Below, one piece after another: positions 26,756 through 55,594 of a stretch of 64,000 nt of DNA. The stretch spans positions 25,916,001-25,980,000 of the forward strand of contig NC_043003.1 in assembly GCF_006345805.1 (NCBI RefSeq), written 5' to 3'. The notes under the pieces were generated by a model, which was given only the letters and a program-made list of their open reading frames with translations, did not search any database and was not told where the DNA came from. The DNA is from Octopus sinensis (taxonomy: Eukaryota). Positions within the stretch are counted from its first letter, which is position 1; every line of letters starts with the position of its first letter. Made by a program: the position numbers and the translations under genes.

Positions 26756-26789
<34 letters not shown>

Positions 26790-30947: not shown

Positions 30948-30990
<43 letters not shown>

Positions 30991-31212: not shown

Positions 31213-31281
<69 letters not shown>

Positions 31282-35659: not shown

Positions 35660-35691
<32 letters not shown>

Positions 35692-35825
35692 CACACACAA
35701 CGGGCTTCTTTCAGTTTCCGTCTACCAAATCTGCTCACAAGGCTTTGGTTCACCTGAGGCTATAGTAGGAAACAATTGCCCAAGGTGCCATGCAGTGGGA
35801 CTGAACCTAGAACCATGTGGTATAC

Positions 35826-35874
<49 letters not shown>

Positions 35875-36335: not shown

Positions 36336-36366
<31 letters not shown>

Positions 36367-38476
36367 AACATGTATGTATGCAGGTATGTATGTATAAAGA
36401 AAGGTTAGAGATTGGGGTAATGGTCCTTTGAAAACATCAAAGGACAGTGTTGGATGTATTGCCAAGAGATGTGATGTTTATGTCAAGGGAATATGGTGGG
36501 ATGGAGTGAGGCAAGATGGGGATTGTTTAAGCTTTTTTTAGTGTCTTAAATATATGTTTGTGATCTTATTTAGTTTCTCCAGTGTTACCATTTTTACCAT
36601 GAATAATTGAATATTTTGGTTTGTGTTTGGATTTGTTGAAGTCCTAGATATTGTGGAAGTATACGTATATATATTGCTGTTTGATTTTTAGCCCCAGGTT
36701 AGTAGATTGATGATTAAAGGCATTCCATTCATTATCATCCCATATTTTTGTCTGTGTAGGACTACATTTTCTGGTGTGCTCTTCTATTTTTATACCAGTA
36801 ACTTATGATTTGAGGGAAGTTGTTGGCTATTTGTAGCAGGATGGGTGACCATGTAGAGAGTCTTCTATTAGTTCTATGTGTGTGTATATGTTGTCTGTTC
36901 TTGTGAATTTCAATTATTTTTTCTCTTTTATCTGTTACCATCTGAGAAGCAAGATATCTATGTCTGCTCTCATCTACATAGGCACTTAAAACATTTAGTG
37001 AAGGCATGGTACATATTGCCAAGTCGTACTTACTTATGAGAGATGGCAATGCTGTTTGATTGGCAGGTTTGATCTGTGAGAAGAAAAAAAAATTGTTGGT
37101 ATTGTATGCATAAAACTAACAGAAAGAAAAATATTTGATAGAAATTATATATATATATATATATGCTGGCAGAAACATTACCATGCCAGACAAAATGCTT
37201 AGCAACATTTCTTCCAACTTTACATTCTGAGTTCAAATGCCACCAACGTTGATAAAACAAGTACCGGTTGAGCACTTCTTCTTCTTAATCCTTTTTGCCC
37301 CTTGTGGAGCATAGGGCCTCAACAGTTGTTTTCCACTTTTTGCGGTCATTGGTGTGTTTCTTGGCTGCTTCCCATGTCAGGCCAGTGGTCCTGAGCTAAT
37401 CCAAAGTGTTCCGTTTCCATGTCTGCTTCAGGCGTCTTCGATTCCTTTTCCCCTGTGGGTTCCAGTCAAGTGCTTGTCATGTCACATTTGAGGGTTCTTT
37501 CCGCAGTGTGTGTCCGATTCATCTCCATTTCCTTTGTCTGATACTTATTTTATGAAGCCCAAAAGAATGAAAGGCAAAGATGACTTCAGCAGAATTTGAA
37601 CCCAGAATGTAAAGACAAACAAACTACTGTTAAGCATTTTGCCCAGCATACTAATTCAGCCAGCTCACCACCTTACTAATGATAATAATAGTAATGATGA
37701 TGAGTGCTATTAGGAAACACAGATGTAAAACAAAAAGAACACAATAAAAAAGTGAATAATTTTAATTATTACTAATTTGTTAATTATTTTTTTTATTTAG
37801 AGCGAGTTATCGCCATGTCATTCCCTTCCACTGGTTTAATGGCATTCTATCGAAACCCTATACATGTAAGTGCTTTTATTTCAACCATAACTCTAGTACT
37901 GAATTTTTAAATGTACAACATCTGTTATTGATAATTCTCGATGCTTCAGATGTGATGTTCTTATTGGAAGATAGCAACAATATATTATAATATAGAATTA
38001 ATGATATTTGAAAGTGTGTATGTATATATATATATATATGTGATGTTTATAATATTACCATGAGAACTCAAAATGAAAGCAAAAGTGTGTGTTTGAAGCA
38101 GCTGTTTTCATATGTGTTATTCACAAAGGCTTTTAAATGAAAGAACAAAAGGTTAAGTGTTTCCTTCAAGCTTTTATTTCATATTTCAAAAAGTATTCAG
38201 ACAGTGAATGTTCAAAAGATAACCAGGTTCAGTTTATCAGCTGATGACTGGAAACGGGCAAGTCCAATTTCTGGAAATTGGAGCCTTTCAGTTATAATGT
38301 GTGTTTGTGTGTGTCCGAGTTTGTATGGTTTTGTGTAGAAGAATATATTAGTCAATGAAATTCCAACTTTGTCTGTTTTATTTACAATTTTTACAATTTT
38401 ACAACAAACTAGTACTTTTATGTATTACGCAATCATCAGGTTTATGCAGTGACAATTGTGTTCCACAATTGACAAC

Positions 38477-38534
<58 letters not shown>

Positions 38535-40022
38535 TACACATATATTTATTATCATCATTTAATGTCCAATTTCCATGCTTGCATGAATCGAAAGGAGTTT
38601 GTTGAAGCAGGTTTTCCATGCCTGGATACCCTTCCTGTTACCAGCCCACACCTGTTTCCATGGCCAGACATGTTTTTTATTTTAGTAGTTTTGACTAGTT
38701 TGGCATTTATGTGTAATAATGCCCTCTATAAAATAAAAATGAATACATTTAAAGGAAAAAAAAAATTGATGGATTTTTTTTCTCTTATGAGGTTTTTCAC
38801 GCTAACTACTTGATAAATTTTTATAAAGATTTTATCCTATTTTAAAATTATAATATATATATATATATATTATATATATATATATATACATCATATAATT
38901 AAGGGCTAAAGAGGGTTATTCTAAAGCCAAATACACTGTTTTATCCACTTATAATCCGCTTGTTACAGGAAAATTGAAACTGAAAACGGGCAACTAACCT
39001 TTAGAAAATTTAAATTTCGTTATCTCTATATTGAATCAATTTCGGACTTAATCTTATAAAAAGATATATTCCTTCTTCAGTAGAACTTTCGATGGGGATA
39101 TAAATAAAATACTCACGTATGATCATGGAAAAAGAATTTTTATTTTTAGATATAAGTGATGTACTCAAGTGTTTATGTTTTTAGCTTGCGCTTTTTCCAT
39201 GATCATACGTGAGTAGTATTTTATTTATATCCCATCGAAAGTTCTACTGAAGAAGGAATATATCTTTTTATAAGATTAAGTCCGAAATTGATTCAATATA
39301 GAGATAACGAAATTTAAATTTTCTAAAGGTTAGTTGCCCGTTTTCAGTTTCAATTTTCCTGTAACAAGCGGATTATAAGTGGATAAAACAGTGTATTTGG
39401 CTTTAGAATAACCCTCTTTAGCCCTTAATTATATGATGTATATTGCAACCGTAACGGTTTTTTTAAATATACTGCCCACGCTTCCTGATGAATTCCTTGC
39501 TGTAGAGTAAGGGACTTCATCCTATATTGCTTAGTAGTAAACTCGATGCTTGCTACAGGAGGACTGGTAACCATTACAATTGTAGCGGCGAAAGGTCTGG
39601 ACGTTGTTTTCTGAGGCTGACCAAAGAATTTTTATTTTTAGATATAAGTGATGTACTCAAGTGTAGTTATGTTTTTAGCTTGCGCTTTTTCCATGATCAT
39701 ACGTGAGTATTTTATTTATATCCCATCGAAAGTTCTACTGAAGAAGGAATATATCTTTTTATAAGATTAAGTCCGAAATTGATTCAATATAGAGATAACG
39801 AAATTTAAATTTTCTAAAGGTTAGTTGCCCGTTTTCAGTTTCAATTTTCCTGTAACAAGCGGATTATAAGTGGATAAAACAGTGTATTTGGCTTTAGAAT
39901 AACCCTCTTTAGCCCTTAATTATATGATGTATATTGCAACCGTAACGGTTTTTTAAAAATATACTGCCCACGCTTCCTGATGAATTCCTTTGCTGTAGAG
40001 TAAGGGACTTCATCCTATATTG

Positions 40023-40061
<39 letters not shown>

Positions 40062-43000
40062 GAAAGAAAGAATGGAGTCGAACGAAGATTTTAACAAAAT
40101 TCCTTTACTCTCGTTCGACTTCATTCTTTCATTTATTCATATAAAAAAAACACACAAATTACCACACAAGAACACGGGGTTTCTGCCCTTGGCATGTAAC
40201 TTCATCTGTGTTTTCTGACATGAATTTGCTACCCAGGTATCGATTAACCGAATTATCAATACTAGGATAATTCATTCACCTAATTATATATATATATATA
40301 TACTATTCTTATACAAGAATGTTGTTGACAGTGACTTCAAAGTCTCGGCCATCTAAGCCATTGTCAGACTGCCAGTGATGGCTTTAGTCGGTTGTAGTCA
40401 CTGTCAATAACTTTCTTGTATAAGAATGATAAATTTGTACTCCAAAAAAGTATAGAGTAACCCATCAGATTAATGTAAAATTATTTTTATTATAACTGAA
40501 CACAAACAAACAATATATATCATCATCATCATTGTTTAATATCTTCCTTCCTTGCTGTCATGGATTGGACAGTTTGATGGGAGCTGGCCAGGCGGGTGCC
40601 AGCACCATGCCTCTGTGCCTGTTTTGGCATGGTTTTTATGGGTGGATGCCCTTCCTAACACCAACCACTCCATAGAGTGGGTTGAGTGCTTTTTACATGG
40701 CACTCACACAGGTGAGTTCAGTTTTGGCATGGTTTTTACAGCTGGATACTTTTCAAATGTCAGCCACTTTAGAATATGAACTGTTAGAGTCACCAAGTGA
40801 CTTTGCAAATATTTAATTCTTTATTGCCCACAAGAGGCTAAACATAGATGGGACAGACAAAGGGACTAAGTCGATTACATCGACTCCAGTCTGTAACTGG
40901 TACTTATTTAATCGACCCCGAAAGGATAGAAGGCAAAGTCGACCTCGGCAGAATTTGAACTCAGAACGTAGCGGCAGACAAAATACTGCTAAGCATTTTG
41001 CTTCACGTGCTAATGATTCAGCCAGCTCGCCACCTTAATATTGGTGCCGAGGTGGCCTTGTGGTTAAGAAGCTTGCTTTGTAAACCTGTGGTCTTGGGTT
41101 CAGTCCCACTGCACAGCACCTTCTATTATAGTTCCAGACTAACCAAAGCCTTGTGAGATCTACTCACTTCTGGGAGCCAATCACTTATCATCATATGACT
41201 TCCAGTGGGCAGTGACACCATTATACCATCATTACTATTAATCATTACTATAGTCATCATCATCATTATATCATATCTCTGTATAATTCTTTTTGATTCC
41301 AGGAAGTGGTCAGGTTTTTTGAAACGAAACATAAAAACCATTACAAGATCTACAACTTGTGTAGTAAGTAAACCAGAAAATTTAATATGTCACTTTTCAG
41401 AATGTAAAATACTCACTATACCTTCATGTTCATGCTGGCTTCTATTGAATAATAATAATGATAATAATAATAATAACAACAACAATAATAAGACACATAG
41501 CCACATGTTTTGTCAGACTCATAGCCACATATTTTGTATGTGCACTGGTTTCATTTATTTTACGAAAGATTTTTTTCTTCACAACCCAGTGTCAAATGCA
41601 ACATGTCATACAATATAGGTGATTTAAAAAAAAAAATACTATATAAAAATTTTAGCTTTGTATTTTCCTATGTCACATTGTGAATGTTGTAAAAGCCAGT
41701 CATTTTAAAAACTGCTTTGGTGCAATACTCTTTATAAATAGAAGTCTAGTATTCTAACATGAGTGAAGGTTCATGACTTAGTGGTTAGGGCATTCAGCTT
41801 ACAATTGTAAGGTTGTGAGCTTGATTCCTAGCAACGAATTGTGTCCTTGAGCAAGACACTTTATTCCACCTTGCTCCAGTCCGCTCTGCTGGCAAAAACA
41901 AGTAGTACCTGTAATACAAAGGAACCCACCTTGTCACATTCTGTGTCATGCTGAATTTCCCTGAGAACTATGTTAAGGGCACATGTGTCTGTGGAGTGCT
42001 CCACCACCTGTACACTACTTTCAAAAGCTGGCTGTTTTGTTGATCAGGTCAATTCGAACACTCATTGTCATAACCCAATAGAGTGCCAGTTAGAGATTGA
42101 TTCTAATATATATTAATCCTCTCCAGATCTTACATTTCCTATTCATTCAACTAATTTTCAGGTGAACGCGATTATGATGAAAGTCTCTTCCATAACAGAG
42201 TTGAACGAATTTGCATCGATGACCACAACGTGCCATCACTGAAGTAAGTTTATATGTTTCCTTGCTGTATTACATCTTCTAATAGAATCTGCATAATGGT
42301 GAGCCAACGAGGGTAGCCTCTATGTAGTCATATGACTAACTAGAAATAGCAGCCCAATTTCCATTAATCCTTTTGTGACCATATTTCTTATTTATTTATT
42401 GCCCACAAGGGGCTAAACATAGAGGGGACCAACAAGGACAGAAAAAGGTATTTAGTCGATTAGATCAACCCCAGTGAGTAACTGGTACTTAATTTATCGA
42501 CCCCAAAAGGATGAAAGGCAAAGCCAACCTCAGTGGAACTTGAACTCAGAATGTAACGGGAGATGAAATGCCGCTAAGCATTTCACCTGGCGTGCTAATG
42601 TTTCTGCCAGCTTGCCGTCTTGTGACCATATTTCTATTAAAATAAACTACTTTTGCTTCAATTCATTTTGAAAATGATAAAGAATTTAGTAAAATAACTT
42701 AATTTAAGTTCTACACACCAGAATAATAACTAACAAGAAATTTTGATGGATCACTTTAAAATAAAAAAATTGTTATAGAACCAGAGGTGGTCTAAGATGA
42801 GTTGGTATCAAAAGCGTTAAGTTGCACCATACCATCTTATAAAGAGAAGGATACATCGTCGTCATCATTATCATTTAACATCCTTTTTTCCATGCTGCCA
42901 TGGGTTGGATGATTTGACAGGAACAGACAAGCCAGATACATCCATAAATAACTTCAATATGATGGAACAGCTGATATGTTTTTGAATCCTGAGTTTGCTC

Positions 43001-46000
43001 AATCAGGGTTTTGGGTTTATGATTCAAAGGTTCAATTCCTAGACCAGGCAGTACATTGTACCTTTCAGCAACAACATTTTTCACATTACTCCTCTTCTCT
43101 CAGCTGGAGCTAAACAACAACAATGACATGCATTATGGGATACCAGTAATGAAGGTCTACATGGGCACTTACCCTGTTAGAAAAAGAAGTCAAATCTACC
43201 TCAAATTACTTCCTACCATATTAAAAAAAAATGAAGAAACCTGTTTTATGGTGTTGTCATTGATATAATATGTCTCAAAATAAAAAGGGATGGTAAACGT
43301 GGACAAAAATAGGAAAGTGAATTATAAATAATTGTTGAAGGTATGAGTAGTTAAAGGTATCAGGCTCGTGGTCATAAATTCGTGGGTTCAATTTTGCTCT
43401 CTGACAGGTTTATGATTGAGCCTGTGGCAGTGGAGACCTCCAGCATTCTCGGTTCCCCTGGACCATATCTCTGCTCACCTCTATTGGGGAGAGATGGCTA
43501 TCCACAGGTGCGAGCCACATGAGTTGGAGTGACTGTTCCAGTGCATCTCCTTCACCATCCTCTGGGGCAACGCCTTTTCTGTTTTGTCTGCTGGGACTAC
43601 AAGGTGGTCTGAATTACAGGAAATCGAGAGACTGCCTTGAAGAATTGTGTTTTAGTGTAGAAATGCGAAAAACATCCCATACACGTTACATTTTATTATC
43701 CTTCATAAGAATCACACTTAAAATATGATTCTTGGACAGGCTGGTGAATTATATTCTTGAATCAAGCCCTTCATTTCATGTTTTTTGTACACTCGACAGA
43801 AAAATTAGTCCCAACATTGAGGGCTTACCTAGTAATAGACTGGCATCCCATTCAGAGAGGGAGAGGTCTTGAAGAGAAAATTTAGCGACTGCTTGATCTT
43901 CTATTTCTGCTGAAGATAGGTCAGTATAATAGAACCAGTTGCACCATTAGCCTTGATTTAATGATTATAAATAACAAATAATCCTTATAGGTGCAGGAGT
44001 GGCTGTGTGGTAAGTAGCTTGCTTATGAACCACATGGTTCCGGGTTCAGTCCCACTGCGTGACACCTTTGCAAGTGTCTTCTACTATTATAGCCTTGGGC
44101 TGACCAAAGCCTTGTGAGTGGATTTGGTAGACGGAAACTGAAAGAAGCCCGTCGTATATGTGTATACATACATATATATATATGTGTGTGTATGTGTGTG
44201 TTTGTCCCCCCCCAACATCGCTTGACAACCGATGCTGGTGTGGTTACATCCCCATAACTTAGTGGTTCAGCAAAAGAGAATGATAGAATAAGTAGTAGGC
44301 TTACAAAGAATAAGTCCTGGGGTCGAATTGCTCGACTAAAGGCGGTGCTCCAGCATGGCCGCAGTCAAATGACTGAAACAAGTAAAAGAGAGTAAGAGTA
44401 ATTGGGAAATATTGGGAACAAAGAGGGGGTGGGGAGAATGCACCTTTATTTCGGCTTATAATTGCTTTTCAAATATTTTCCTTTTTATTTTTGGCAGGAA
44501 AATGGTCGAATTTTGTTCTGATGTACGAGAATGGATGGCAGCAGACAAGAATAATATCATTGCTGTTCACTGTAAAGGTGGTAAAGGACGAACAGGAACC
44601 ATCATCTGTGTGTGGCTTATAGACTGTGGACTGTTTCAGGAAGCAAAGGTTAGTGTCTTGTACTTCATTTGTGTGTTGTGTGTAGACTGAGTTCAAGGAA
44701 AGACGCAGTTTCCACGACTTTTGCTGCGGATTCTTCTCCAAGATCGATGTGTATGGTTTTAATCTATACGTTCTTTGGTGAATGTTTGCTGGAAAATCGT
44801 AGATGGGGGAAGGAATTGAGGTGTCTGGTTTGAATGCTTGGAACAGAACAAACTCCGTTAAATCATCCAGGAACTTTTAGGCCTATTGTATAAGGGAAGG
44901 AACTGGGTTAGATCTGAATGCTTAAAACAAGTCTGTTACACACCAAAGCAAACTAATGTTAACCAGGGTAACGTATTAAGCCCATAATTTCAAGGGAGAG
45001 AACTGGATTTGGCTCTGATAGTTTGCAAACAGAGTGACTTCGGCTGAAGACATCCAGGGACCTGTGATGATTTATGTAGCGGTAGGCTTACAAGGGAGAT
45101 AACTGCATCTTGCCTAAATGTTAGTCACAGAAAACTCCACTCAAGGCATCGTAGGGTGGACTTATCATCCACTCCGTCCAAAATAAGAAAGAATGGCACC
45201 AGCACTGAGAGGGTGTCCTACTGGAAAGGAGAAAGAATTTGATCTCAAGCACAGTGCATCTCATAATAAGGCTTAGGTTCACCAGAGTAAGGTCAGGTTT
45301 GATAGTCCATCTAATACACTGATACTTTAGATGACAGAGACCCAAATTCTGACGTTCTTATTTGATATTTCGATATTTTATAGAAATAGCAAATAATAAT
45401 AATAATAATAAAGCCCTGATGCAGTGGCTTCTGATCCTAACTGATTGGAAGTGTTATCATGTACATTGTTTTGTCTTGGTATAAAAGATGGGCTACAGCA
45501 AATATTCTGCTTAATACCACAGATTTGTTTGTCAGTTGCTTGACCTTAACCAGTTGAGCATGTCCCTTAGTGGCTGACGATTTGTGCATCTCTGATCACG
45601 AGCAGACGTAGTGGGGGAGCATCATAGCCATGGGTTGAGAGGGATTCTTTGGTGTTTGAATAATTCACTTTTGGAAGCCTGGGTGTTTTGTTCAACATCC
45701 TTAAACAACCCTTATTCAGGGACCTTTCGAGCGGGATGGGTTACTCGACCTGGGAAGCAAGTTTTTTACCACACAGCTATGCCTGTTTGGTTTTCCCCTT
45801 GTGGTTAGGGCGTTGCATTCACAATCTTATGATCTTGACTAGGTGATGTTTTGAGTCCATGAACAAAACACTTCAGTTTCACATTACTCCAGTCTGCTCA
45901 ACTGTAAATGGGTTCCAACAATAGCTGGGAAATAAACCATGCGATCGACCAGCATTGTGGGAGTGTTGTACTCTTAGTCTTTTATTTGCCATGAAACCAG

Positions 46001-47318
46001 GTTAAACTCTCTCATGAGTTTTAGGGCTCATGAAGGGCCTATGCTTAAGTCCTGGTAACCTCTCTGTACAATACCTTCTCAACTTCACATTGCTCTTGTT
46101 TGATATTTCAGTGCTATATATTTCTTTCCTGTGTGATATTTTCATTGTTTAATATTTTCTCTGCCAGACATCCTCTCATTTCAGTATCTTTTCTAAATAA
46201 CATTTTTCTGATGCTTCTCAGGATGTTTTAGAATATTTTGGAGACAGACGCACAGATCTTAGTGTTGGTAAAATGTTTCAAGGTGTACAAACGCCAAGTC
46301 AGGTTAGTATATTTATTGATGTATTCACACACACGCATGCCCAACTTCCATTCTCTAGTTCTCTCTATCTCTCTGCATAGACTATCACATTGTGCTTGTT
46401 ATTACTACACATATCTATAATATAAAATCCATTCTGTCTGTCTGTGTGTGTGTGTGTCTTCTAGGATCTCGGACATCCTCCATCCGATTGTGTTCAAATT
46501 TGATATGTAGATACCAACAATATCAGGGCGTGTATAAGTCTTGAAAAAACTACAAAAATCGATTCCAGGTGAGAATGTGATCGATAAAGCTGAATAAAAT
46601 CGTTTTTCTTTGGAATAGAAAAAAAGTCTATCTTTATTTCTTCTTTTGCTGGTGTCTCAAATTTAGGTTAAATCAGTGTTTCTTGAAAGGGAGGCCTATA
46701 GGGAGGTCGGACAAGTTGTTTTGAGAAAATTTGGTTTAAATGTTCGACAACTCAGCACTGTCCATTGGACAGTGGGAGGGGGTGCGTTTTGCTCGTATAC
46801 ATATATTTATACATATTTACCAACTTTTATACACATATATACACTTACTGCACAATATTCACAAACATCTTCTTTGGCTGCTCTTGTTCAATAATCATCT
46901 CTGGCAGCCTTGCATGTGGGTTACAAGACCTGTTCTTGATCTGCAGTAGTGATGACATTTGTTGCAGATGAAGCTACTTGACACAATGGAGAAGTGATGC
47001 CTCTGCCTCTCATGTGCTCTTTTGTATTCTCTCTGCTGTTTCTCCTCAATGGCTGAGATTACAAGCTTCAGTGATTGGTACCATTCATCGTGCTGCAGGA
47101 CATTGTCCTCCTGGGTGTCTGGGGAGATGTCAGAGTTCTTCAAGTCTCCTCAAAACATCCCTGACATGTTTGTCACTTAAATGTGACTAACCTTAAGGGT
47201 GGATGCTACTGTAGCTTGTAGCCCCAGGAGGACACCTCCTCCAGCTGGCTATTGACACACTTTCTGTGCCCTATCAGTATTTGCAAAGAGAAGTCAAGGA
47301 TTTAGGTGGAAAATATAC

Positions 47319-47350
<32 letters not shown>

Positions 47351-48053
47351 CAGACATACACACACACATATGTATGCTTTTGGATGTATGCAACAGGTGT
47401 CCCATAATGAAAACAGCTTACCCTTTTATCTCAAGAAACATAAAGATACAATACATCACCTGTAATAATCTTTAATAAAAGAATGGAAGGTCACAGCTTG
47501 ATTTATTTTATCATAGTTTTGTTCAATGAAAGCTTCTTTTCCTCTCTGCGAGTTTATTTAACATTTTGGTAAATTTTGCTGAATACTTATCTCTGCATTT
47601 TCAATAGATGTTCCATAGTTTGTGGGGTCTGTGGTGGTTGTTATTTGAACTAGATGTAACTGGTTATTTATGATATCTTTTTTTGTGGATTGTATAATAT
47701 ACAAACAATTTCAGCATGGAAGATGTTTGTAAGCCATTTAAAAACACACAAAAAAAATGTTAGATTCATTTCAGCATTTAAATTTAATTTGTGTCAAAAT
47801 ATTTTCATCGCTTTGAAGCTGCAACCTGTTCACTGTCAAAACTTCGTGAGATGCAGCACAAAGTTTCATCAGTAAACAGGTCGTCGCTTCAAAGCGACGA
47901 AAATATTTTGACACAAATGAAATTTAAATGTTGAAGTGGAACTAATGGTTTTTGTGCATTCTTAAATAGCTTACATACATCTTCCATGCTGCAATTATTT
48001 TTATTTCAGCACATAATCTCAGATCAAGTCATTTGCTATGCAAGTACATCTGT

Positions 48054-48128
<75 letters not shown>

Positions 48129-51100
48129 ATTTTATTTAAATCATCATCATCATCGTTTAACGTCCTTTTTCCATGCTAGCATGGGTTGGACAGTTCAATC
48201 GGAATCTGGGAAGCCAGGAAGCTGCACCAGGCTCCAGTCTGATCTGGCAGTGTTTCTACAGCTGGGTGCCCTTCCTAATGCCAACCACTCCTTGAGTGTA
48301 GTGGGTGCCTTTTATGCACCACCAGCACAGGGGCCAGAGGAGGCTGGCAAATGGTCACAATCAGTTGGTGCTTTTTACGTGTCATCAACACAGATGCCAG
48401 TCAGGCAGCGCTGGCACTCTGAGAGTGTAGTGGGTGCTTTTATGTGCCACCGACACAAGGGCCAGTCAGGCGGTACTGGCAATGGCCATGCTCAAATGGT
48501 GCTTTTTATGTGCCACCTGCACAGGAGCCAGTCCAGCGGCACTGGCAATGACCTTGCTCGAATGTTTTTCATGTGCCACCAGCACAAGTGCCAGTAAGGC
48601 GATGCAGGTAATGATCACACTCAAATGGTGTTTTTTACGTGCCATTGGCATGGAGGCCAACTTGTTGCTCTGGCAACGATCTCCCTTGTGTGGTACTCTT
48701 AGCGCTCCACTAGCATGGATGCCAGTCATCGAATTTGATTTCGATTTCAGTATGTATTATTATATTTGTTTTATTTAATTTTTATTGTTAAAATAAAACT
48801 TTAATAATAATATATTTAAATGCATGTTAATTTTAAATACTAAATATTTACTATTGATTTGCTGTATATCATTTTAGATAATTGAGTAAATACTGGTCAA
48901 ATAAGTGTTCCATAGTCACACATGGGAAGATGGTTGTTTGGAGAGCTTGTGTTCCTTATAGTTAGTTGTGTGTCACTATGACTGATCTGGGGCCAAACAG
49001 CAATAATGATCACAAGTACCCTCATTGAAAATCCCCATACCTATGTAAATAGTCATGTATATACGTACACACACGCACAAACACATATACACTTGTTGAT
49101 GCTGTTTATCCCTTATTGAGCTGACCTATGATTAAAATGCATTCTAGCCACCATAATCTCGTCTTTTTCCAGACATAGTCTATCTAGGAATACATTATCA
49201 AATATGTTCCCTCTTTTTAAGATGGTTGGGAGTGATTTGAGGTAAATTGGTTGCTATTTCTTCCATGTTGAGTGAGCTTTTAAGAGCTCCTTCATATATC
49301 GTAAATCCTCAAGTATAATCAGCACTTTTTTCCCAAAATTTAAAGGTCAAAATGCCTAGTGCGTACTATATACTAGGTTGAAAATGAAAATTATTTTCTA
49401 AGCAATGTCCGAGTCTCTATTTGTATTCTGGCAATGTTTATTCAGACACATTTTGTGATGTCGGGCACGAAAATACATTAAGCTAAGCCTGAAAGCAATG
49501 AAGTCATAAAAGAATCATCCATAACTTGCAGTAAGCAACATTTATTAAAATAAAAGTATTCAGAACACAGAATAACATGTAACAAAAACAATTTGCAAAC
49601 ATATTTACATTCCCATATAACAGTTAAGAACATCACCATTATTGTATTACGCATGCGCAGAAGTGTTTGTTCAACTAGGTGCTGCTGGCTTAATTACGCA
49701 CAACTCAAGTTAGAGAAGGGGTGCGTATTATACACAAGGTTTAGGTTTTTCAGAAGTACAGCCCCCTAAAAATCCCCTGCATATTATACTCAAGGGCGGA
49801 CTATACTCGAGGATTTACGGTACACATTTTTATATATGCCATATTACTTTCCCTCACATCTACTCTAGTGTTATCTCTTTCTATCTCTGTGTCTCTCACT
49901 CGCACTTTCTCTCTCTCTCTCTCTCTCTCATGAAACTATTCTCTGTCTCTATTACAGAGCCGGTATGTCGGTTATTTTGAAAAAATGAAACAGGATTACA
50001 ATGGAAAATTGCCTGAGAAGAAAGAATTGAATCTGATCTCAATAAAAATCACCGCAATTAAAGGTATGTGCAGTAGTGCAACAGAAGTTGCATCAATGCG
50101 TTGGTGGTCATTGATGCAATAGGAGTTGCATCAGTGTGTGGGTGTGTGCAGCAGTGTTTAGTGTTGGCTTAGTGATGCAAGGGAAGTATTGGTGAGCAGC
50201 ATTGCAATGGAAATGTTAGTATGTAGTATTGCAACATAGATGCATTTATGCAGCTGTACATGCGTTGATATGCATTACTGCAACAGGCCTGTGGATATGT
50301 AATAGTGTGACTAAATATTAGTGTATCATATATATATATTTATTTCACCACCTATATTATTGTTATTCATTTTACTAATGATAATAATATCTACATAAAT
50401 ATTTTTGAATATTTATTCATTTAGTGTGTTTGTGTCTGTGTTTGTCCCCTCCAACATCGCTTGACAACCGATGCTGGTGTGTTTATGTCCCTGTAACTTA
50501 GCGATTCGGCGAAAGAGTCTGATAGAATAAGTACTAAGCTTACAAAGAATAAGTCCTGGGGTCGATTTGCTCGACTAAAGGCTGTGCTCCAGCATGGCCA
50601 CAGTCAAATGACTGAAACAAGTAAAAGAGTTAATGTCTGTTTATTTCTACCTTAGAAACTTGGGTTGCTGACACAGCCAAATTAATTATGATAGGTGTCA
50701 AAATTCTTCTATTTGGTTGATGGCTGATAAGGTACTGAGCATGATAGCATCTATTAAGTGTGTATTGCTATTACATTAAAGGAGTTGCTCTCAAACTACC
50801 CTGCTTCATTCATTGTAGTCACTGTGCTGTCATTCTTTAGCCTCAGGTCTGTCAGGATCAATCGGACCTATGATCAAAGGCATTCCGGTCATGACTGTCT
50901 AGTCTTTTCTCAGATATCTTACATATAATTACTCAATGTGCTCTGTCCTTTTTTAAGATGACAGGTTGTGATTTGAGGGAGACTTGGCTACTGATTCAAG
51001 CAAGTCTAGCAATAGCATAGAGATTCCTTCACTCATAATCACCATCTGCTGCTGGAGTCCCAAACCACTGAATCATGGACCAGTACCAGACGGCATAGAA

Positions 51101-51302
51101 AGAATAACTTTATATTCCATTGTCATCTTTCTTGTGCCTGATTTATGCCTTTTCTCTTATATAAAATCTGTTCTATCTGTGTGTGTGTCTTCTTGGATCT
51201 TGAGCATCCTCCATCCGATTGCACTCAAATTGATATGTAGATACCGATGGTATCGGGGCATGTATAAGTCTTGAAAAAATTACAAAAATCGATTCCAGGT
51301 GA

Positions 51303-51336
<34 letters not shown>

Positions 51337-54300
51337 TGTGTACAGTGCTCAGGTGCACTACAACTCATCTAAAGTGTATATATAATCAGGTGTAGTTTCG
51401 ACGGATTTCGGGAAGCATGAGGGCCTTAAAGGATGTAGTGTCATGGCAGTCAACAACTGATGCAGGCAGTTTGCGATAGATAAAGCCGTTTTTGTCCTGC
51501 TTTTCTTCCGTCAACCTGTACATAATGGCACCTTCCATTTTTTTGTTGTTTTTGTACTGCTTAAGGGCACGTTTCTTTCCTGCCAAGCTTACTGTTTAAA
51601 CCATGTTTGTGTTCTCCCAGTCAGCAGCCTTATCATTACTGGTACTTTAAACTCTTCGGTTGCATATTTGTGTGAATAAAATCGTTTTTCTTTGGAATAG
51701 TAAAAAAGTCTATCTTTATTTCTTCTTTTGCTGGTGTCTCAAATTTAGGTTAAATCAGTGTTTCTCAAAGGGGAGACCTATGGGACGGTCGGACAATTCG
51801 TTTTGAGAAAATTTGGTTTAAATGTTTGACAACTCAGCACCATCCATTGGATGGGGGATTGTTTTGCTTGTATATATATAAACTGCAAATCAAAAGTATG
51901 CTTTATTTGTTGTTCTAGGTGTTGGCAATGGTGACGGTAGTGACCTCAGTATAGAGATACGTACCGCTGAAAACCTCATCTATGAGTGCCACTTAGGGGC
52001 AAGTATTAACTGTCAGGTGAGTGAGAGATTTATTTCTCAGTAGACTTGATATATCTCAACAGAAAATAATTTCAAACATGATATTCTTCAACAAAAAATA
52101 TGTTAGTATATAAAACTGCTTTCTGCAGTTAACAGTAATGAAATTTCGATTGGCTATGTCTGATTTCTGCAGTAAAGGGAAAACACCTGTTACAATTGTT
52201 TCAGTTGATCTCTACTTTAAACACACATTACTCATAAATATCTATGAGATAATTTACATAATAATGAAATTATTGTATACAGTGCTCAGGTGCACTACAA
52301 CTTGTCAAAAGTGCATATAAAGCATATGCAGTAATGTACAAATGTCTGGAAAGTGAGCAGTGTATGAATCAGATACATGCTTGCGTGTGTATGGAGAGGA
52401 GAAAATCAGGTGAATCTCAGAAAGCATTTGTTGGTGAATCTCAGAAAGCATGGAAGTTTTGAAGGATGCAGTGCTCCGACAATTAACAACTGATGCCGGC
52501 AGTTTGCACCATACTTCAGCAAGTCTTAGCGTGAAAAAATGTTTCCAAAAGTCATGGGAGCTGTGCTGTTTTCTGACTTTGTAAACATGTCCATGGGTGT
52601 TAGACAGGTGGAGTTTGAAAAAGACTTGTGTAATTTAAAAGCAGTTGAAGTACTTTGTAACACCATCTTCTTTAGACCTGATAGCTTTGTTGATTTATAT
52701 ATATATGTGTGTGCGTGTACATTGATGTTGTTGCAGTTGATTGAGATGCATTTCTATCAACAGGTGATTAAATACACAGACAGTGACAGTATCATGATCA
52801 ACCTGCACCAATGTCCAGTTCTGGTCAATGATATAAAAGTTAAATTCAATTCTACAAATGTAAGTAGACTCCTCAGAGCCCTTCCCCTCACATTCTACTC
52901 TTTTGGTTTTTCTTTCTACCTTTTTCCTGCCTTCATTCTGTCCTTCTCACTCTCACTTCTTATTGTGTTCTTAGAAAAGACATAATGTGTTGTATGATGC
53001 TACACAGTTGTTGCTATTATATTAAAAGACTTTGCCCTCAAATTACCCTGCTTCATTCATTGTGTTATGCTCTCTAATCACTGTGTTGTCATTCTTTAGC
53101 CCCAGGTCTGTCAGGATCAAGCAGACCTATGATCAAAGGCATTCCAGTTATGACTGTCCAGTCTTTTCTTGGATATCTTACATATAATTACTCAATGTGC
53201 TCTGTCCTTTTTTAAGATGACAGGTTGTGATTTGAGGGAGACTTGGTTACTAATTCAAGCAAGTCTAGCAATAGCATAGAGATTCCCCTACTCATAATCA
53301 CCATCTGCTGCTGGGGTCCCAAATCACTGGGCCACAAACCAGTACCAGTCTGCATAGAAAAAATAAATGTTTAAATTTTGTTTTATTAACTATCGCAGTC
53401 TGCAGGTTGATTTTTTGCATTAGTTATGTAATATATGTTATATATATATATATATAATAATTATATTATATATTTCACCAATGAAGGAGTCATACCCAAT
53501 GACTGGTGTAGCAGCACGACAGTCAACTGCTACAAAGGTAAAAGTGATGCATTAGATACAAATAATTACAGAGGTATCAAGTTGTTGGATCAGGTAATGA
53601 AAGTCACAGAGAGGGTCATAGCCCAATTAATTAAGGAGAGAGTCAGTCTAGAAGAGATGCAGATTGGGTTTGTGCCAAGGAAAAGCACCACTGATGCTAT
53701 ATTTCTGGTAAGGCAGATGCTGGAGAAATATATAGCCAAAGATAAACCTCTGTACTTGGCATTTCAGAATTTTAAGATCATATTGTTTAGTTCCAAGTCA
53801 TCTTTGACTGAGCAGATGTATGATGAAAATAGTTCGAGTTATGACCTGCACTCCACTCTTCTTTGGTCAGACTATGTAAACTAATCATCCCCTCTCTCTC
53901 ATTTTAAGGGTGTAATTAAAAGGAGATTTAGCTGTTATTTCTAGCAAGCTAAGCAACCACATAGTGCCCTTTTTTTTTTACCAAAGGATTCCTAATTGTG
54001 TTTGAGTAAAAAATGATTTGGACATAAATATGGCATAAATTTATAAAGTTACATTCAATTCTGGAAGAGGAATAGTTTTATTGAGAAATACACTTGGCTA
54101 CAAACCAAAGAGATATAGGAGTGAGGTTCAAATCTCACTCACCTGATAACTTTTTTTTTTATTTGTCTTTCTTGTAATATTCTCCTCCATTTTCATATTT
54201 ACATTTAATACATGCAAATTTATTCATTTTCCTTTTCTGTTTCAGAAAAAACTTCCAAAGGGATATGATAATTGTCCGTTTTATTTCTGGTTTCACACAT

Positions 54301-55594
54301 CATTCATTGAAGATCACAGGTAAATGTGTGTGTGTGTGTGTGTTTGTGTCCTCTTTGTCTTTGTTCAGGCACTATGCAAAAATAAGGTCACCATTCAAAT
54401 AATCTGTCACTGTTTACATTCTGCTACAAAAAAACATATTCCTGACATTGGGCTGTTCAACAGTTGAAGGACTCACAGAAACATTTACTTACTTGGAAAC
54501 AAGTGAAGGTTGGTGACAGGAAGAGTATCTGACCATCTGCCAGGTTTTTCTGACATCACTGACTGTTTAGCCAGTGCTAAGTTATATCAGTTCAGCTGAT
54601 TTTCAGTCAGATATTTGGCATTTGTCTGGCTGTCACTGATAATCTGTAATACGGTGAAATCATGCCAGTGCTGACAACATACAATGTTGTCAGTGCTTTT
54701 AACCCTTTCGTTACCAACCTGGCTGAAACCGGCTCTGGCTCTGAGTACAAATGTTTTGTTTTCATAAGTTCTGAATTAAAATCTTCCACTAAACCTTAGT
54801 CACAATTTATGTTCCTGACACTAGCTGAATGATACCTAAGTTGTTTTACTAAATTCTTTATTATATTTAAAGTAATTGAAAGAAACACAGAGCATCTCAA
54901 AATAAATACAGTAATGAAAGGGTTAAATATTTGTTGCCTTCAAGAGATGATTTCTTGGATATTTACCGCAGTCCTAGGTGTTATGAACAATGCATCAAAT
55001 TATAATAATAATGAAATTATTGTATACAGTGCTCAGGTGCTCCACAACTTGTCAAAAGTGCGTATAAAGCATATGCAGTAATGTACAAATGTCTGGGAAG
55101 TGAACAGTGTATGAGTCAGATACATGCTTGCGCGTGTATGGAGAGGAGAAAATCAGGTGTAGTGTTGGCGAATCTCAGAAAGCATGGAAGTTTTGAAGGA
55201 TGCAGTGCTCCGACAACTAACAACTGATGCCGACAGTTTGTACCATACTTCAGCAACTCTTAGCATGAAAAAATGTTTCTGAAAGTCATGGGAGCTGTGC
55301 TGTTTTCTGTCTTTGTAAACATGTCCACAGGTGTTAGACAGGTGGAGTTTGAAAAGGTGCTCAGAGTTGTTGGATGTGCTAATTAATTCTACCTCAGTAT
55401 GTTTCATGTGATAGTTGCTAGCAAGAAAATATGGATGTTCAAAATGATGATCAACTGCATGTCACTACCTTTCTTTCTTTTCCAGTTTATATTTGTCTCG
55501 AGATGAAATTGATAACCCACACAAACCAAAATTATGGAATATTTACAGAGAGAATTTTGCTATTATAGCTTCATTTGAAGACGTTAAGGATTGA
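25712..55594 (+). CDS. VSP: Voltage-sensing phosphatase (VSP/TPTE family; voltage sensor + PTEN-like phosphatase + C2), 14 coding exons, ~562 aa
   Basis: join(25712-25962,28613-28816,30089-30232,31373-31539,37801-37865,41303-41363,42162-42243,44498-44648,46222-46302,49958-50063,51919-52016,52764-52859,54246-54319,55486-55594). All introns are GT-AG, phases match, total 1689 nt with no internal stop. Motifs: S4 RxxRxxRxxR, [48 protein letters not shown]. Confidence 0.96.
26688..26800. repeat. Compound trinucleotide microsatellite (GAT)(GTA)(GAA)(TTA)(CCT)
   Basis: Read directly from the sequence. Confidence 0.9.
27675..28580 (+). repeat. Head-to-tail cluster of family A SINEs upstream of exon 2
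   Basis: Five same-strand copies or part-copies. The last ends ~30 nt before the acceptor. Confidence 0.8.
28613..28816 (+). CDS. VSP: VSP exon 2 (S0, S1, S2: [10 protein letters not shown]...[14 protein letters not shown])
   Basis: ctgttttaacag acceptor, GG|gtttgt donor. S1 Asp and S2 YFMLE match VSP voltage sensors. Confidence 0.92.
29742..29789 (+). ncRNA. Minimal type I hammerhead ribozyme relic (right arm of inverted repeat 29580-29856)
   Basis: GTCT-CTGATGA-A-GGGATAT/ATATCCC-A-GAAA-C-AGCT-G-TG-AGAC. The cleavage triplet is GUG. The minus-strand mate at 29642-29689 has GUA. Confidence 0.7.
30089..30232 (+). CDS. VSP: VSP exon 3 (S3 and S3-S4 loop: [17 protein letters not shown]...DHHSYV)
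   Basis: tttttccatgaag acceptor, AA|gtatgt donor, phase 2-2. Not in the ORF track. FF..W.D..D S3 motif present. Confidence 0.9.
31089..31130 (+). ncRNA. Minimal hammerhead ribozyme candidate, second family
   Basis: AGAGT-CTGATGA-GACTCTGTAGATGT-GAAA-C-CATTG-G-TT-ACT. Core intact, helices I and II weak. Related pieces at 30370-30429 (-), 30461-30487 (+), 31011-31062 (-). Confidence 0.55.
31373..31539 (+). CDS. VSP: VSP exon 4 (S4 and linker: [15 protein letters not shown]...[20 protein letters not shown])
   Basis: ttctgttgccag acceptor, G|gtaatg donor. Four periodic Arg and the phosphoinositide-binding motif. Confidence 0.96.
34667..34752 (+). ncRNA. Degenerate hammerhead ribozyme with long helix II
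   Basis: TTTAC-TTGATGA...ACACCC-GAAA-C-AGCT-G-TA-GTAAA. Helix I 5 bp, C3 changed to U. Confidence 0.5.
37276..37545 (-). mobile_element. RTE-clade LINE 3' end
   Basis: IGHTLRK...[13 protein letters not shown] remnant with a (GAA)n tail. Confidence 0.75.
37801..37865 (+). CDS. VSP: VSP exon 5 ([22 protein letters not shown])
   Basis: ttttttatttag acceptor, gtaagt donor. PTEN-family IAMSFP and YRNP motifs. Confidence 0.95.
38884..40026. repeat. Inverted plus tandem duplication flanked by (TA)n
   Basis: Arms 38884-39134 / 39191-39443. Direct copies 39131-39533 / 39623-40026. Confidence 0.95.
40304..40428. repeat. Small MITE-like inverted repeat
   Basis: attcttatacaagaatgttgttgacagtgact / agtcactgtcaataactttcttgtataagaat. 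Confidence 0.75.
41303..41363 (+). CDS. VSP: VSP exon 6 ([20 protein letters not shown])
   Basis: ttttgattccag acceptor, A|gtaagt donor. YNLC motif. Confidence 0.95.
42162..42243 (+). CDS. VSP: VSP exon 7 ([27 protein letters not shown])
   Basis: ctaattttcag acceptor, AA|gtaagt donor. DDHNVP (WPD-equivalent) loop. Confidence 0.95.
42367..42818. mobile_element. Older family 1 MITE split by a SINE (42389-42619, minus strand)
   Basis: 16-bp duplication TTGTGACCATATTTCT at 42373-42388 and 42620-42635 flanks the SINE. Confidence 0.75.
43990..44400 (+). mobile_element. SINE family B, full length, just upstream of the catalytic exon
   Basis: Close match to 1901-2310. Confidence 0.85.
44498..44648 (+). 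CDS. VSP: VSP exon 8 (catalytic P-loop HCKGGKGR at 44568-44591)
   Basis: ttatttttggcag acceptor, gttagt donor. The GG (not AG) in the CX5R motif is VSP-type rather than PTEN-type. Confidence 0.97.
44690..45340 (-). mobile_element. Highly decayed CR1/L2-like RT fragment
   Basis: [11 protein letters not shown] resembles the LFADD motif. Many stops. Confidence 0.4.
46222..46302 (+). CDS. VSP: VSP exon 9 ([27 protein letters not shown], gating/TI loop)
   Basis: atgcttctcag acceptor, CAG|gttagt donor, phase 0-0. Confidence 0.95.
46414..46795 (+). mobile_element. Helitron-like element (second family), intron 9
   Basis: A|TCTATAATATAAAA start, CTCG|T end. Second copy at 51153-51870. Confidence 0.5.
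46880..47260 (-). mobile_element. RTE-like LINE C-terminal fragment with C2H2-type motif
   Basis: [23 protein letters not shown]. Confidence 0.65.
47707..47996. repeat. Near-complete ~290-bp imperfect palindrome (MITE-like)
   Basis: Arms pair almost to the centre (~47855). Confidence 0.85.
48140..48740 (-). mobile_element. Retroposon 3' tail family ending in (GAT)n, with internal ~65-bp tandem array
   Basis: catcatcatcgtttaacgtcc..ccatgctagcatgggttggac motif. Other copies at ~9040, 19560, 26040, 32556-32890 (opposite strand), 33930, 35875, 40520, 56110, 61450. Confidence 0.75.
49299..49820. mobile_element. pogo/Tigger-like MITE
   Basis: TA flanks. TIR TCGTAAATCCTCAAGTATA / TATACTCGAGGATTTACGG. 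Confidence 0.7.
49958..50063 (+). CDS. VSP: VSP exon 10 ([19 protein letters not shown]...ITAIK)
   Basis: tctctattacag acceptor, G|gtatgt donor. RYVGYF motif. Confidence 0.95.
51153..51870 (+). mobile_element. Helitron-like element interrupted by a CR1-type LINE 3' fragment (~51303-51672)
   Basis: Matches 46414-46795 on both sides of an insertion that has an (AAT)n tail and a [11 protein letters not shown] remnant on the minus strand. Confidence 0.55.
51919..52016 (+). CDS. VSP: VSP exon 11 (C2: [14 protein letters not shown]...NCQ)
   Basis: ttgttgttctag acceptor, CAG|gtgagt donor. GVG.G.GSDL motif. Confidence 0.94.
52764..52859 (+). CDS. VSP: VSP exon 12 (C2: VIKYTDSD...[16 protein letters not shown])
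   Basis: tttctatcaacag acceptor, gtaagt donor. CPVL..DIKV.F motif. Confidence 0.93.
53480..53764 (+). mobile_element. RTE-clade LINE RT-proximal fragment, uninterrupted frame
   Basis: [30 protein letters not shown]...[23 protein letters not shown]. Confidence 0.9.
54246..54319 (+). CDS. VSP: VSP exon 13 ([24 protein letters not shown])
   Basis: ttttctgtttcag acceptor, AG|gtaaat donor. Contains the Tyr equivalent to Ci-VSP Y522. Confidence 0.95.
54703..54922. mobile_element. piggyBac-type MITE family 1 (opposite orientation)
   Basis: TTAA flanks. Reverse complement of the 2879 copy. Confidence 0.85.
55005..55405 (-). mobile_element. CR1-type LINE 3' fragment (sister copy ~52258-52730)
   Basis: CGHVYK..K......KHFF.LRVA.VW.KL.ASVV motif and an (AAT)n tail. 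Confidence 0.8.

What the first reader, a model, noticed from the sequence alone, without database searches (positions are those of the whole stretch)
46288..46290. Natural Glu-to-Gln change at the VSP 'glutamate switch'
Seen: the gating loop reads FQGVQTPSQ (CAA, residue 398), exactly 48 residues after the catalytic Cys350. Ci-VSP C363 to E411 has the same spacing. The rest of the active site is canonical ([15 protein letters not shown], Tyr509 = Y522). Established: Ci-VSP E411 is the gating-loop residue that competes with substrate, and its substitution alters voltage coupling and phosphoinositide preference. PTEN has Thr there, and the chordate VSPs I recall have GVET. Inference: this enzyme may have a different substrate profile (more 3-phosphatase or PI(3,5)P2 activity) or leakier basal activity. 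A-to-I editing cannot restore Glu from CAA, but it could give Arg.
Basis: partly seen in the sequence, partly recalled or inferred. Interest (0 to 1): 0.75.

Follow-up and report, generated by a model that had tools for sequence, protein, structure and literature searches.

The report
Octopus voltage-sensing phosphatase: Gln at "glutamate switch"
The octopus voltage-sensing lipid phosphatase really does carry glutamine where the well-studied sea-squirt enzyme has its "gating" glutamate, but the same glutamine occurs in all squid, cuttlefish and octopus copies sampled and in corals, a sponge, a comb jelly and choanoflagellates, and the equivalent lab mutant is reported as well tolerated, so it is most likely a mild natural variant.

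Summary
The window is Octopus sinensis DNA carrying a 14-exon VSP/TPTE2-like gene (25712-55594, + strand). My gene model is identical to RefSeq XP_029639154.1. Codon CAA at 46288-46290 encodes Gln398. It lies 48 residues after the catalytic Cys350 and aligns with Ci-VSP Glu411.

- **Gln is not an oddity of this gene.** It is present in every coleoid cephalopod VSP sampled: three Octopus species, Argonauta, and Sepia-like and squid-like transcripts. The codon varies synonymously (CAA or CAG).
- **Gln recurs elsewhere.** It is found in anthozoan corals and anemones, a sea spider, a sponge, a ctenophore, three choanoflagellates and marine protists.
- **All other molluscs have Glu.** So do the annelids, the brachiopod, most arthropods and the chordates sampled. 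On a 140-sequence tree the column flips between Glu and Gln at least 7 times. Cephalopods nest inside Glu-type molluscs, so theirs is a secondary Glu-to-Gln change.
- **The lab mutant is mild.** Reviews report that Ci-VSP E411Q showed no significant change in activity or specificity in vitro, and that hydrophilic substitutions are tolerated.
- **A structural parallel exists.** Glu411 superposes on the Q-loop Gln262 of PTP1B, and octopus QTPSQ matches that pattern.

Most likely this is a canonical voltage-activated phosphoinositide phosphatase with at most a quantitative shift in gating. Interest is modest.

The parts
25712..55594 (+). Coding span of the Octopus sinensis VSP (TPTE2-like) gene, isoform X3, 562 aa. 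The 14 coding exons are 25712-25962, 28613-28816, 30089-30232, 31373-31539, 37801-37865, 41303-41363, 42162-42243, 44498-44648, 46222-46302, 49958-50063, 51919-52016, 52764-52859, 54246-54319 and 55486-55594.
   Evidence: All internal boundaries are AG/GT. The translation is identical to P0123 = XP_029639154.1.
46222..46302 (+). Exon 9, residues 376-402. It encodes the whole gating (TI) loop.
46246..46293 (+). Gating loop [16 protein letters not shown], residues 384-399, equivalent to Ci-VSP 397-412.
   Evidence: phmmer alignment to Ci-VSP chains; coordinates.
46288..46290 (+). Codon CAA = Gln398, the homologue of Ci-VSP Glu411.
46300..46302 (+). Codon for Gln402 (= Ci-VSP Gln415), the second Gln of the QTxxQ pattern.
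   Evidence: role taken from PMC4322731.
44568..44591 (+). P-loop HCKGGKGR, residues 349-356. The catalytic Cys350 codon is 44571-44573. Gly352 is the VSP-type residue where PTEN has Ala126.
42218..42229 (+). DDHN, residues 317-320. Asp318 = Ci-VSP Asp331, the general acid.
54264..54266 (+). Tyr509 = Ci-VSP Tyr522, the C2-domain CBR3 residue that reaches the active site.
   Evidence: Alignment index.
31373..31539 (+). Exon 4. It encodes S4 with four Arg at every third position ([13 protein letters not shown]) and the phosphoinositide-binding linker NKRRY (31485-31499).
   Evidence: aligned to 9c49 and 4g7v.

Best explanation
Gln398 is a genuine, lineage-fixed and selectively maintained substitution in the voltage-sensing phosphatase of coleoid cephalopods. 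It arose by a single G-to-C change (GAR to CAR) after cephalopods split from other molluscs. It returns the site to a state that is widespread in non-bilaterian and unicellular relatives.

The enzyme is otherwise a canonical VSP. It has a four-helix voltage sensor with an arginine-repeat S4, a basic NKRRY linker, a Cys-X5-Arg phosphatase with the VSP-type Gly, an intact gating loop including the Asp that pairs with the linker, and a PTEN-type C2 domain.

Inferred mechanism: depolarisation moves S4, the linker pulls on the gating loop, and the active site becomes accessible to PI(3,4,5)P3 and PI(4,5)P2. The Glx side chain at 398 keeps its length and hydrogen-bonding ability. It can therefore still help Gln402 and Asp318 position the hydrolytic water, as Gln262 and Gln266 do in PTP1B. 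It lacks the negative charge, so it should mimic substrate phosphate less well in the occluded state.

The expected consequence is quantitative at most: a modest change in basal activity or in the voltage-activity relation, not a new substrate specificity.

Shown here: the sequence, the homology, the phylogenetic distribution and the conservation. Inferred: everything about catalysis and gating.
For: **Identity and model.** The model is 100% identical to the RefSeq protein. PDB matches have E = 1e-116 to 1e-110. Pfam PTEN_C2 scores 1.4e-27.

**Conservation in cephalopods.** All five cephalopod clusters, and every informative member of them, read FQGVQTPSQ. The codon is CAA in Octopus, another octopod and Sepia-like cDNA, but CAG in squid-like cDNA. 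The amino acid, not the codon, is what is kept.

**Phylogeny.** The cephalopod clade (100*) nests inside a starred mollusc clade whose 67 other members all have Glu. There are at least 7 E/Q changes on the tree, and a single all-Gln clade is rejected with p-AU 3e-83.

**Natural Gln elsewhere.** Anthozoans and Pycnogonum; Sycon, Bolinopsis and three choanoflagellates.

**Site constraint.** All 135 VSP-type rows used for the tree have Glu or Gln at this column. The other residues seen in VSP-type representatives (Ser, Gly, Ala) were in sequences left out of that set.

**No co-adapted remodelling.** The only other cephalopod-specific change at a column at least 85% conserved is V377.

**Literature.** E411Q, E411A and E411T showed no significant change in vitro, and hydrophilic residues are tolerated in oocytes (PMC6182344). 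Glu411 superposes on PTP1B Gln262 and Gln415 on Gln266 (PMC4322731).
Against: - No functional data exist for any natural Gln-type VSP that I could find.
- The Ci-VSP mutant data are described as inconsistent between laboratories. I could not read the primary papers, so the size of E411Q's effect on voltage coupling in full-length protein is unknown to me.
- The gated-access model gives Glu411 a central role (PMC11289409), so loss of charge could matter more in the intact protein than in the isolated domain.
- Strict fixation of Gln over the whole coleoid radiation could reflect adaptive tuning rather than near-neutrality.
Confidence: 0.65

Rival explanations
1. One reading: Gln398 substantially re-tunes the enzyme, giving a different phosphoinositide preference (more 3-phosphatase or PI(3,5)P2 activity) or a leaky, weakly voltage-gated phosphatase in cephalopods.
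For: Glu411 is the proposed gate that occludes the active site (PMC11289409; PMC9245683). E411T changes relative activities in oocytes (PMC4322731). Gln is strictly fixed in coleoids despite synonymous turnover, which is compatible with adaptive value.
Against: E411Q itself is reported as not significantly different in vitro and as tolerated in cells. The specificity determinants Gly352 and Thr399 are VSP-type, not PTEN-type. Glu and Gln interchange at least 7 times across VSP evolution, even within corals, which argues for near-equivalence.
Confidence: 0.17
2. The CAA codon is a substrate for cephalopod A-to-I RNA editing. A fraction of transcripts would encode Arg398 (CGA), giving a regulated charge reversal at the gate.
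For: Codon logic only: CAA or CAG with the middle A edited reads as Arg. Coleoids recode extensively (general knowledge). Sepia-like transcript variants of this gene differ only by A/G-type changes at four other positions.
Against: All assembled cephalopod transcripts read CAA or CAG. No cluster member has Arg at this site. The exon plus flanks folds no better than shuffles (z = +0.74). This is a limited test, because only 271 nt were folded and no reads were examined.
Confidence: 0.05
3. Cephalopod Gln is a retained ancestral state, either through a hidden Gln-type paralogue lost elsewhere or because Glu arose many times independently, rather than a secondary change.
For: Gln is the state in choanoflagellates, a sponge, a ctenophore and anthozoans.
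Against: Cephalopods nest within Glu-type molluscs with starred support. Chiton, gastropods, bivalves, a brachiopod, annelids and a nemertean all have Glu. Forcing all Gln-type sequences into one clade costs 596 log-likelihood units, p-AU 3e-83.
Confidence: 0.03
4. Sequencing or assembly error, or a private polymorphism of this individual.
For: None.
Against: The same residue appears in three Octopus genome annotations, in Argonauta, and in independent transcriptome assemblies.
Confidence: 0.01

Closest known systems
Ci-VSP (Ciona intestinalis voltage-sensing phosphatase; PDB 3awf, 3v0d-3v0h)
   Same: Same architecture. The P-loop [16 protein letters not shown] at the start of the gating loop, FQGV-x-T-x-SQ, Tyr522 and the C2 domain are all shared. 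The Cys-to-Glx spacing is the same, at 48. E about 1e-110.
   Different: Gln398 replaces Glu411. Pro400 replaces Ala413. The N-terminus is unrelated.
VSP chain of PDB 9c49 (deposited as TPTE2) and vertebrate TPTE/TPTE2
   Same: Best solved-structure match, E = 1.4e-116, aligned from S4 through C2. Orthologous family.
   Different: These proteins have Glu at the gate (FQGVETPSQ).
Non-cephalopod mollusc VSPs (for example Haliotis, Patella, Liolophura, Mercenaria; P0006-P0047)
   Same: 60-66% identical, and the nearest relatives on the tree. The gating loop is identical apart from the gate residue.
   Different: All have Glu. Bivalves carry extra paralogues that were not seen for cephalopods.
Anthozoan VSPs (Nematostella Nv-VSP, Exaiptasia, Porites, Montipora; P0081-P0101)
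   Same: They carry the same natural Gln at the gate (GVQTPSQ) with a canonical P-loop.
   Different: About 51% identical. They have Tyr rather than Phe four residues upstream (YQGVQ). Their Gln has an independent origin on the tree.
Classical protein-tyrosine phosphatase Q-loop (PTP1B Gln262/Gln266)
   Same: Ci-VSP Glu411 and Gln415 superpose on PTP1B Gln262 and Gln266 (PMC4322731). Octopus Q398-T-P-S-Q402 therefore restores a Gln-x3-Gln pair at those two positions. The fuller pattern Q-T-x-x-Q in PTP1B is from my own memory, not a tool result.
   Different: A different subfamily (PTEN-like lipid phosphatase). No role for Gln398 in water positioning has been shown.
PTEN
   Same: Homologous phosphatase and C2 core (E about 1e-40).
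   Different: PTEN has HCKAGKGR and Thr-Ile at the loop. It has no voltage sensor. The octopus protein is not PTEN-like at any specificity determinant.

Membership tests
Voltage-sensing phosphatase (VSP / TPTE family) | N-terminal four-helix voltage-sensor domain with an S4 carrying basic residues at every third position | tested here: met
   S4 reads [13 protein letters not shown], with four Arg at spacing 3. The S4-linker region aligns to the 9c49 chain and to the Ci-VSP VSD 4g7v.
Voltage-sensing phosphatase (VSP / TPTE family) | Basic phosphoinositide-binding linker (NKRRY) between S4 and the phosphatase | tested here: met
   NKRRY at residues 238-242, aligned with the same motif in Ci-VSP and 9c49.
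Voltage-sensing phosphatase (VSP / TPTE family) | Cys-X5-Arg P-loop of VSP type (HCKGGKGR, Gly where PTEN has Ala126) plus the general-acid Asp | tested here: met
   HCKGGKGR at 349-356 and DDHN at 317-320. PTEN-type representatives have HCKAGKGR.
Voltage-sensing phosphatase (VSP / TPTE family) | PTEN-type C2 domain with the CBR3 Tyr (Ci-VSP Y522) | tested here: met
   PF10409 PTEN_C2, E = 1.4e-27, residues 421-558. Tyr509 aligns with Y522.
Voltage-sensing phosphatase (VSP / TPTE family) | Orthology: groups with VSPs rather than PTEN on a tree | tested here: met
   Nested in the mollusc VSP clade (96*), with PTEN-like sequences as outgroup (99*).
Voltage-sensing phosphatase (VSP / TPTE family) | Glutamate at the gating-loop 'switch' (Ci-VSP E411) | tested here: not met
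   Gln398. This residue is not family-defining. Twenty-four of the 135 VSP-type sequences in my tree set carry Gln, including sponge, ctenophore, choanoflagellate and anthozoan proteins.
Voltage-sensing phosphatase (VSP / TPTE family) | Depolarisation-activated phosphoinositide 5-/3-phosphatase activity | not testable with these tools
   Needs expression and electrophysiology. I found no published data for any cephalopod VSP.
Classical PTP Q-loop (works-like comparison only) | Two Gln, four residues apart, that position the hydrolytic water for cysteinyl-phosphate hydrolysis | tested here: inconclusive
   The pattern Q398-x3-Q402 is present. Structural equivalence of these positions to PTP1B Q262 and Q266 comes from PMC4322731, not from a computation here. 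Pfam Y_phosphatase matches only residues 317-366 and does not reach the loop.

The most novel reading that the evidence does not exclude
The 'glutamate switch' is not a universal VSP feature. Gln, the classical PTP Q-loop residue, would be the original state in the holozoan ancestor, as seen in choanoflagellates, a sponge, a ctenophore and anthozoans. The charged Glu gate would then be a later acquisition, in bilaterians and independently in a jellyfish and a coral. Coleoid cephalopods reverted to Gln and have kept it under selection. If the charge matters for occluding the active site at rest, cephalopod and non-bilaterian VSPs would be natural variants with weaker auto-occlusion and a measurably different voltage-activity relation. 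That would give a ready-made comparative test of the gated-access model against the domain-displacement model of VSP coupling.
Probability: 0.2. Interest if true: 0.6.

Novelty: new member of a known kind. Interest (0 to 1): 0.3.

Why it matters
VSPs are the only known enzymes directly switched by membrane voltage, and how the sensor gates the active site is still debated (gated access through Glu411 versus displacement of the phosphatase domain). This survey shows that the gate residue is a natural Glu/Gln dimorphism. Every VSP-type sequence in the tree set has one or the other, it has flipped at least seven times, and Gln is fixed in coleoid cephalopods and common in early-branching lineages. 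That suggests the conserved requirement is a Glx-sized hydrogen-bonding side chain rather than the negative charge. It also identifies natural enzymes (octopus, Nematostella, Sycon, choanoflagellate) in which the role of the charge could be tested. For annotating this octopus gene the practical message is that it is an ordinary, intact VSP orthologue.

Tried and rejected
1. **Primary papers.** I could not read Liu et al. 2012 or Matsuda et al. 2011; they are not held under DOI or PMC id. The mutant data are therefore cited through PMC6182344 and PMC4322731.
2. **Octopus transcript.** A look-up of contigs encoding exactly the 562-aa octopus isoform found none. cDNA support therefore comes from other coleoids only.
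3. **Isoform X1 first exon.** The first coding exon of isoform X1 (MDEKALEP...) was not found in any frame of the window.
4. **Co-varying substitutions.** I looked for changes shared by Gln-type lineages. Only cephalopod V377 turned up, and it is not shared by other Gln lineages.
5. **Local RNA structure.** Structure that could support editing at the CAA was not significant.
6. **Literature.** Searches found no work on cephalopod, cnidarian or choanoflagellate VSP catalysis or on natural E/Q variation.
7. **Rejected readings.** Sequencing error, pseudogene (intact ORF, canonical splice sites, conserved across coleoids), PTEN-like re-specification (P-loop Gly and loop Thr are VSP-type) and a single origin of all Gln-type VSPs (AU test).
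8. **Not attempted.** I did not run structure prediction, because the tool gives no side-chain coordinates and the fold is not in doubt. I did not search for Nautilus, because any hits would be unnamed transcript assemblies that cannot be assigned to a species here.

Full report
**What is in the sequence.** The window is AT-rich, repeat-laden animal DNA. Around the reported coordinates lies a short exon, 46222-46302, bounded by AG and GT. It reads [27 protein letters not shown], and bases 46288-46290 are CAA.

Motif scans found DDHN at 42218 and HCKGGKGR at 44568 on the same strand. Open frames, a tblastn with the aligned part of PDB chain 9c49, and inspection of the splice junctions gave 14 coding exons from 25712 to 55594, all with AG/GT boundaries.

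The model is letter-for-letter identical to XP_029639154.1, 'TPTE2-like isoform X3' of Octopus sinensis. The longer isoform X1 (P0001) matched at 100% identity over the searched region (residues 86-562), so the window is O. sinensis DNA.

**Homology of the residue.** phmmer against all PDB chains gives E = 1.4e-116 to the 9c49 VSP and about 1e-110 to the Ci-VSP cytoplasmic region. PTEN scores about 1e-40. In those alignments octopus FQGVQTPSQ sits on Ci-VSP FQGVETASQ and on 9c49 FQGVETPSQ.

- From the chain indices, Gln398 = Glu411 and Tyr509 = Tyr522.
- By the constant offset of 13, Asp318 = Asp331, Gly352 = Gly365, Asp387 = Asp400, Thr399 = Thr412 and Gln402 = Gln415.
- Pfam finds the PTEN C2 domain (1.4e-27) and the phosphatase core.
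- S4 carries four Arg at every third position, and the linker has NKRRY.

Every defining VSP feature that sequence can show is present. The only departure is the gate residue.

Among the 120 best homologues, 102 have Glu and 18 have Gln, and 119 have the same spacing of 48 from the catalytic Cys.

The Gln carriers in that list are:
- all five cephalopod clusters: Octopus, a second octopod, Argonauta hians, a Sepia-like and a squid-like decapodiform;
- twelve anthozoan-type sequences: nine named (Nematostella, Exaiptasia, Actinostola, Oculina, Montipora, four from Porites) and three unnamed that fall in the coral clade on the tree;
- the sea spider Pycnogonum.

Members of the Octopus cluster from O. 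bimaculoides and O. vulgaris also have Gln.

A full HMMER scan of 1.84 billion 50%-identity representatives returned the 150 best hits. Among those with a VSP-type P-loop, 11 have Gln-Thr, 46 Glu-Thr and 9 Glu-Ser or Glu-Ala. A handful of divergent forms carry other residues, and PTEN-type proteins have Thr-Ile.

Cluster look-ups identified Gln-type representatives as the sponge Sycon ciliatum, the ctenophore Bolinopsis microptera, the choanoflagellates Hartaetosiga gracilis, Salpingoeca kvevrii and Craspedida sp. UC1, and marine-plankton sequences. Glu-type representatives include the jellyfish Rhopilema, crustaceans, the rotifer relative Seison and an Orbicella-like coral.

**Direction of change.** I built a maximum-likelihood tree of 140 sequences with PTEN-like outgroups.
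- It places the cephalopods as one clade (SH-aLRT 100).
- That clade sits inside a starred mollusc clade of 72 rows in which every non-cephalopod has Glu: chiton, gastropods and three bivalve paralogue groups. That mollusc clade in turn sits inside a starred Glu-type lophotrochozoan clade.
- The Glu/Gln character needs at least 7 changes.
- Forcing all Gln-type proteins into one clade costs 596 log-likelihood units (p-AU 3e-83).

The cephalopod Gln is therefore a secondary Glu-to-Gln change, a single G-to-C transversion at the first codon position. It is convergent with, or a reversion to, the state seen in choanoflagellates, a sponge, a ctenophore and anthozoans. The state at the root of VSPs is ambiguous, because divergent protist VSPs show both residues. 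Without Nautilus I cannot tell whether the change dates to the cephalopod stem or the coleoid stem.

**Is it maintained?** Transcript contigs recovered for three other coleoids encode Gln with CAA (Sepia-like L001-L003, octopod L004) or CAG (squid-like L005-L007). Synonymous turnover with an unchanged amino acid across the octopod-decapodiform split indicates purifying selection for Gln.

The only other position where all cephalopods differ from a residue at least 85% conserved in Glu-type VSPs is Val377, which is Ser elsewhere. Other Gln lineages do not share it. There is thus no sign of a co-adapted remodelling of the active site.

**What the literature says about the residue.**
- The gated-access model holds that Glu411 occludes the catalytic pocket at rest and swings away on depolarisation (PMC11289409; PMC9245683).
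- The mutants tell a mixed story. According to PMC6182344, Matsuda et al. 2011 found no significant difference in activity or specificity for E411A, E411Q or E411T with the isolated domain.
- The same review reports that Liu et al. 2012 found hydrophobic substitutions damaging, but Asn, Gln and Thr 'more tolerable'.
- PMC4322731 adds that E411T lowers PI(3,4)P2 activity. It also notes that Glu411 and Gln415 superpose on the Q-loop residues Gln262 and Gln266 of PTP1B, which position the hydrolytic water.
- Octopus Q398-T-P-S-Q402 therefore recreates a Gln pair at those two positions.

I could not read the two primary papers.

**Most likely mechanism.** The octopus protein is a normal depolarisation-activated phosphoinositide phosphatase. 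Gln398 keeps the side-chain length and the hydrogen-bonding capacity needed in the pocket. That property appears to be what is conserved, since all 135 VSP-type rows used for the tree have Glu or Gln there.

What Gln398 loses is the negative charge that could mimic substrate phosphate in the occluded state. I expect at most a quantitative effect on basal activity or on the voltage-activity relation, and not a new substrate profile. The determinants that separate VSP from PTEN, namely Gly352 in the P-loop and Thr399 in the loop, are VSP-type. These steps are inferred and nothing about activity is shown here. I put this at about 0.65.

**RNA editing.** I found no support for it, however.
- All transcript assemblies keep CAA or CAG.
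- No cluster member has Arg at the site.
- The exon with its intron flanks folds no better than shuffled sequence (z = +0.74).

This does not exclude low-level editing, because reads were not available.

**Comparison with what is known, and novelty.** The gene is an annotated orthologue of a well-known family. The natural Glu/Gln dimorphism of the 'glutamate switch', and its phylogenetic pattern, are not discussed in any paper I could search. That is a small comparative insight, not a new kind of system. I file the finding as a new member of a known kind with modest interest (0.3).

The most novel reading still open is that Gln is the original holozoan state and the charged gate a later acquisition. 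Gln-type VSPs would then have measurably weaker auto-occlusion. I give that about 0.2. It would be of fair interest to VSP biophysicists because it offers a natural test of the gated-access model.

Noticed in passing
window 17481-17587 (+): A full-length U6 spliceosomal snRNA match (Rfam RF00026, 87.1 bits against a gathering score of 44, model positions 1-105 of 105). It lies about 8 kb upstream of the first coding exon of the VSP isoform in the window. I did not examine whether it is a functional gene or a retro-copy.
   Followed up: no
window 38884-39443: A 560-bp stretch that is 92.6% identical to its own reverse complement, that is, a large palindrome or inverted duplication. It lies inside the intron between exons 5 and 6.
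   Followed up: no
window 23269-24157: A degenerate tandem array about 0.9 kb long, with 82-88% self-identity at many offsets. It is rich in TG/CA-type units and lies upstream of the first coding exon.
   Followed up: no
window, for example 29167-29580, 30566-30948, 35466-35828, 43992-44398, 50424-50629, 62867-63051: At least 25 dispersed segments of 150-450 bp are repeated 3-7 times within the window, mostly in VSP introns. They look like SINE-like interspersed repeats. No tRNA-like sequence was detected by ARAGORN.
   Followed up: partly
window 53432-53881 (+): A 150-aa open frame in the intron between exons 12 and 13 has a weak reverse-transcriptase match (PF00078 RVT_1, E = 5.5e-4, below the gathering score). 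It is probably a decayed LINE fragment.
   Followed up: partly
upstream of window 25672, or outside the window: RefSeq isoform X1 (P0001, 590 aa) begins with MDEKALEPSSKSNNDRND, spliced to an acceptor near 25680. That first coding exon could not be found in any frame of the window. It is either upstream of the window or split.
   Followed up: partly
L001-L003 and cluster 2 proteins P0004 / P0135 (Sepia-like VSP transcripts): Two full-length transcript-derived variants differ at only four residues: V358I, R361K, R431K and M574V. All are A/G-type codon differences. This is the signature expected of A-to-I recoding, but also of simple polymorphism or species differences. None is at the gate residue.
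   Followed up: no
window 46225-46227 (Val377): All five cephalopod VSPs have Val where 86% of Glu-type VSPs have Ser (by offset, Ci-VSP has Ala390). This is the only other cephalopod-specific change at a well-conserved column.
   Followed up: partly
window 30231-30232 + 31373 (Lys200, codon split across exons 3 and 4): By spacing from the S4 arginine ladder, the position six residues before the first periodic Arg is Lys in octopus. That position corresponds to Ci-VSP Arg217, whose neutralisation shifts voltage dependence according to PMC3440755. The correspondence rests on my own counting, not on an alignment.
   Followed up: no
P0083 (Orbicella-like coral) versus P0081, P0073 and P0074: A coral VSP with Glu is nested inside an otherwise all-Gln stony-coral clade, and the scyphozoan Rhopilema also has Glu. 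The Glu/Gln flip therefore runs in both directions within Cnidaria.
   Followed up: partly
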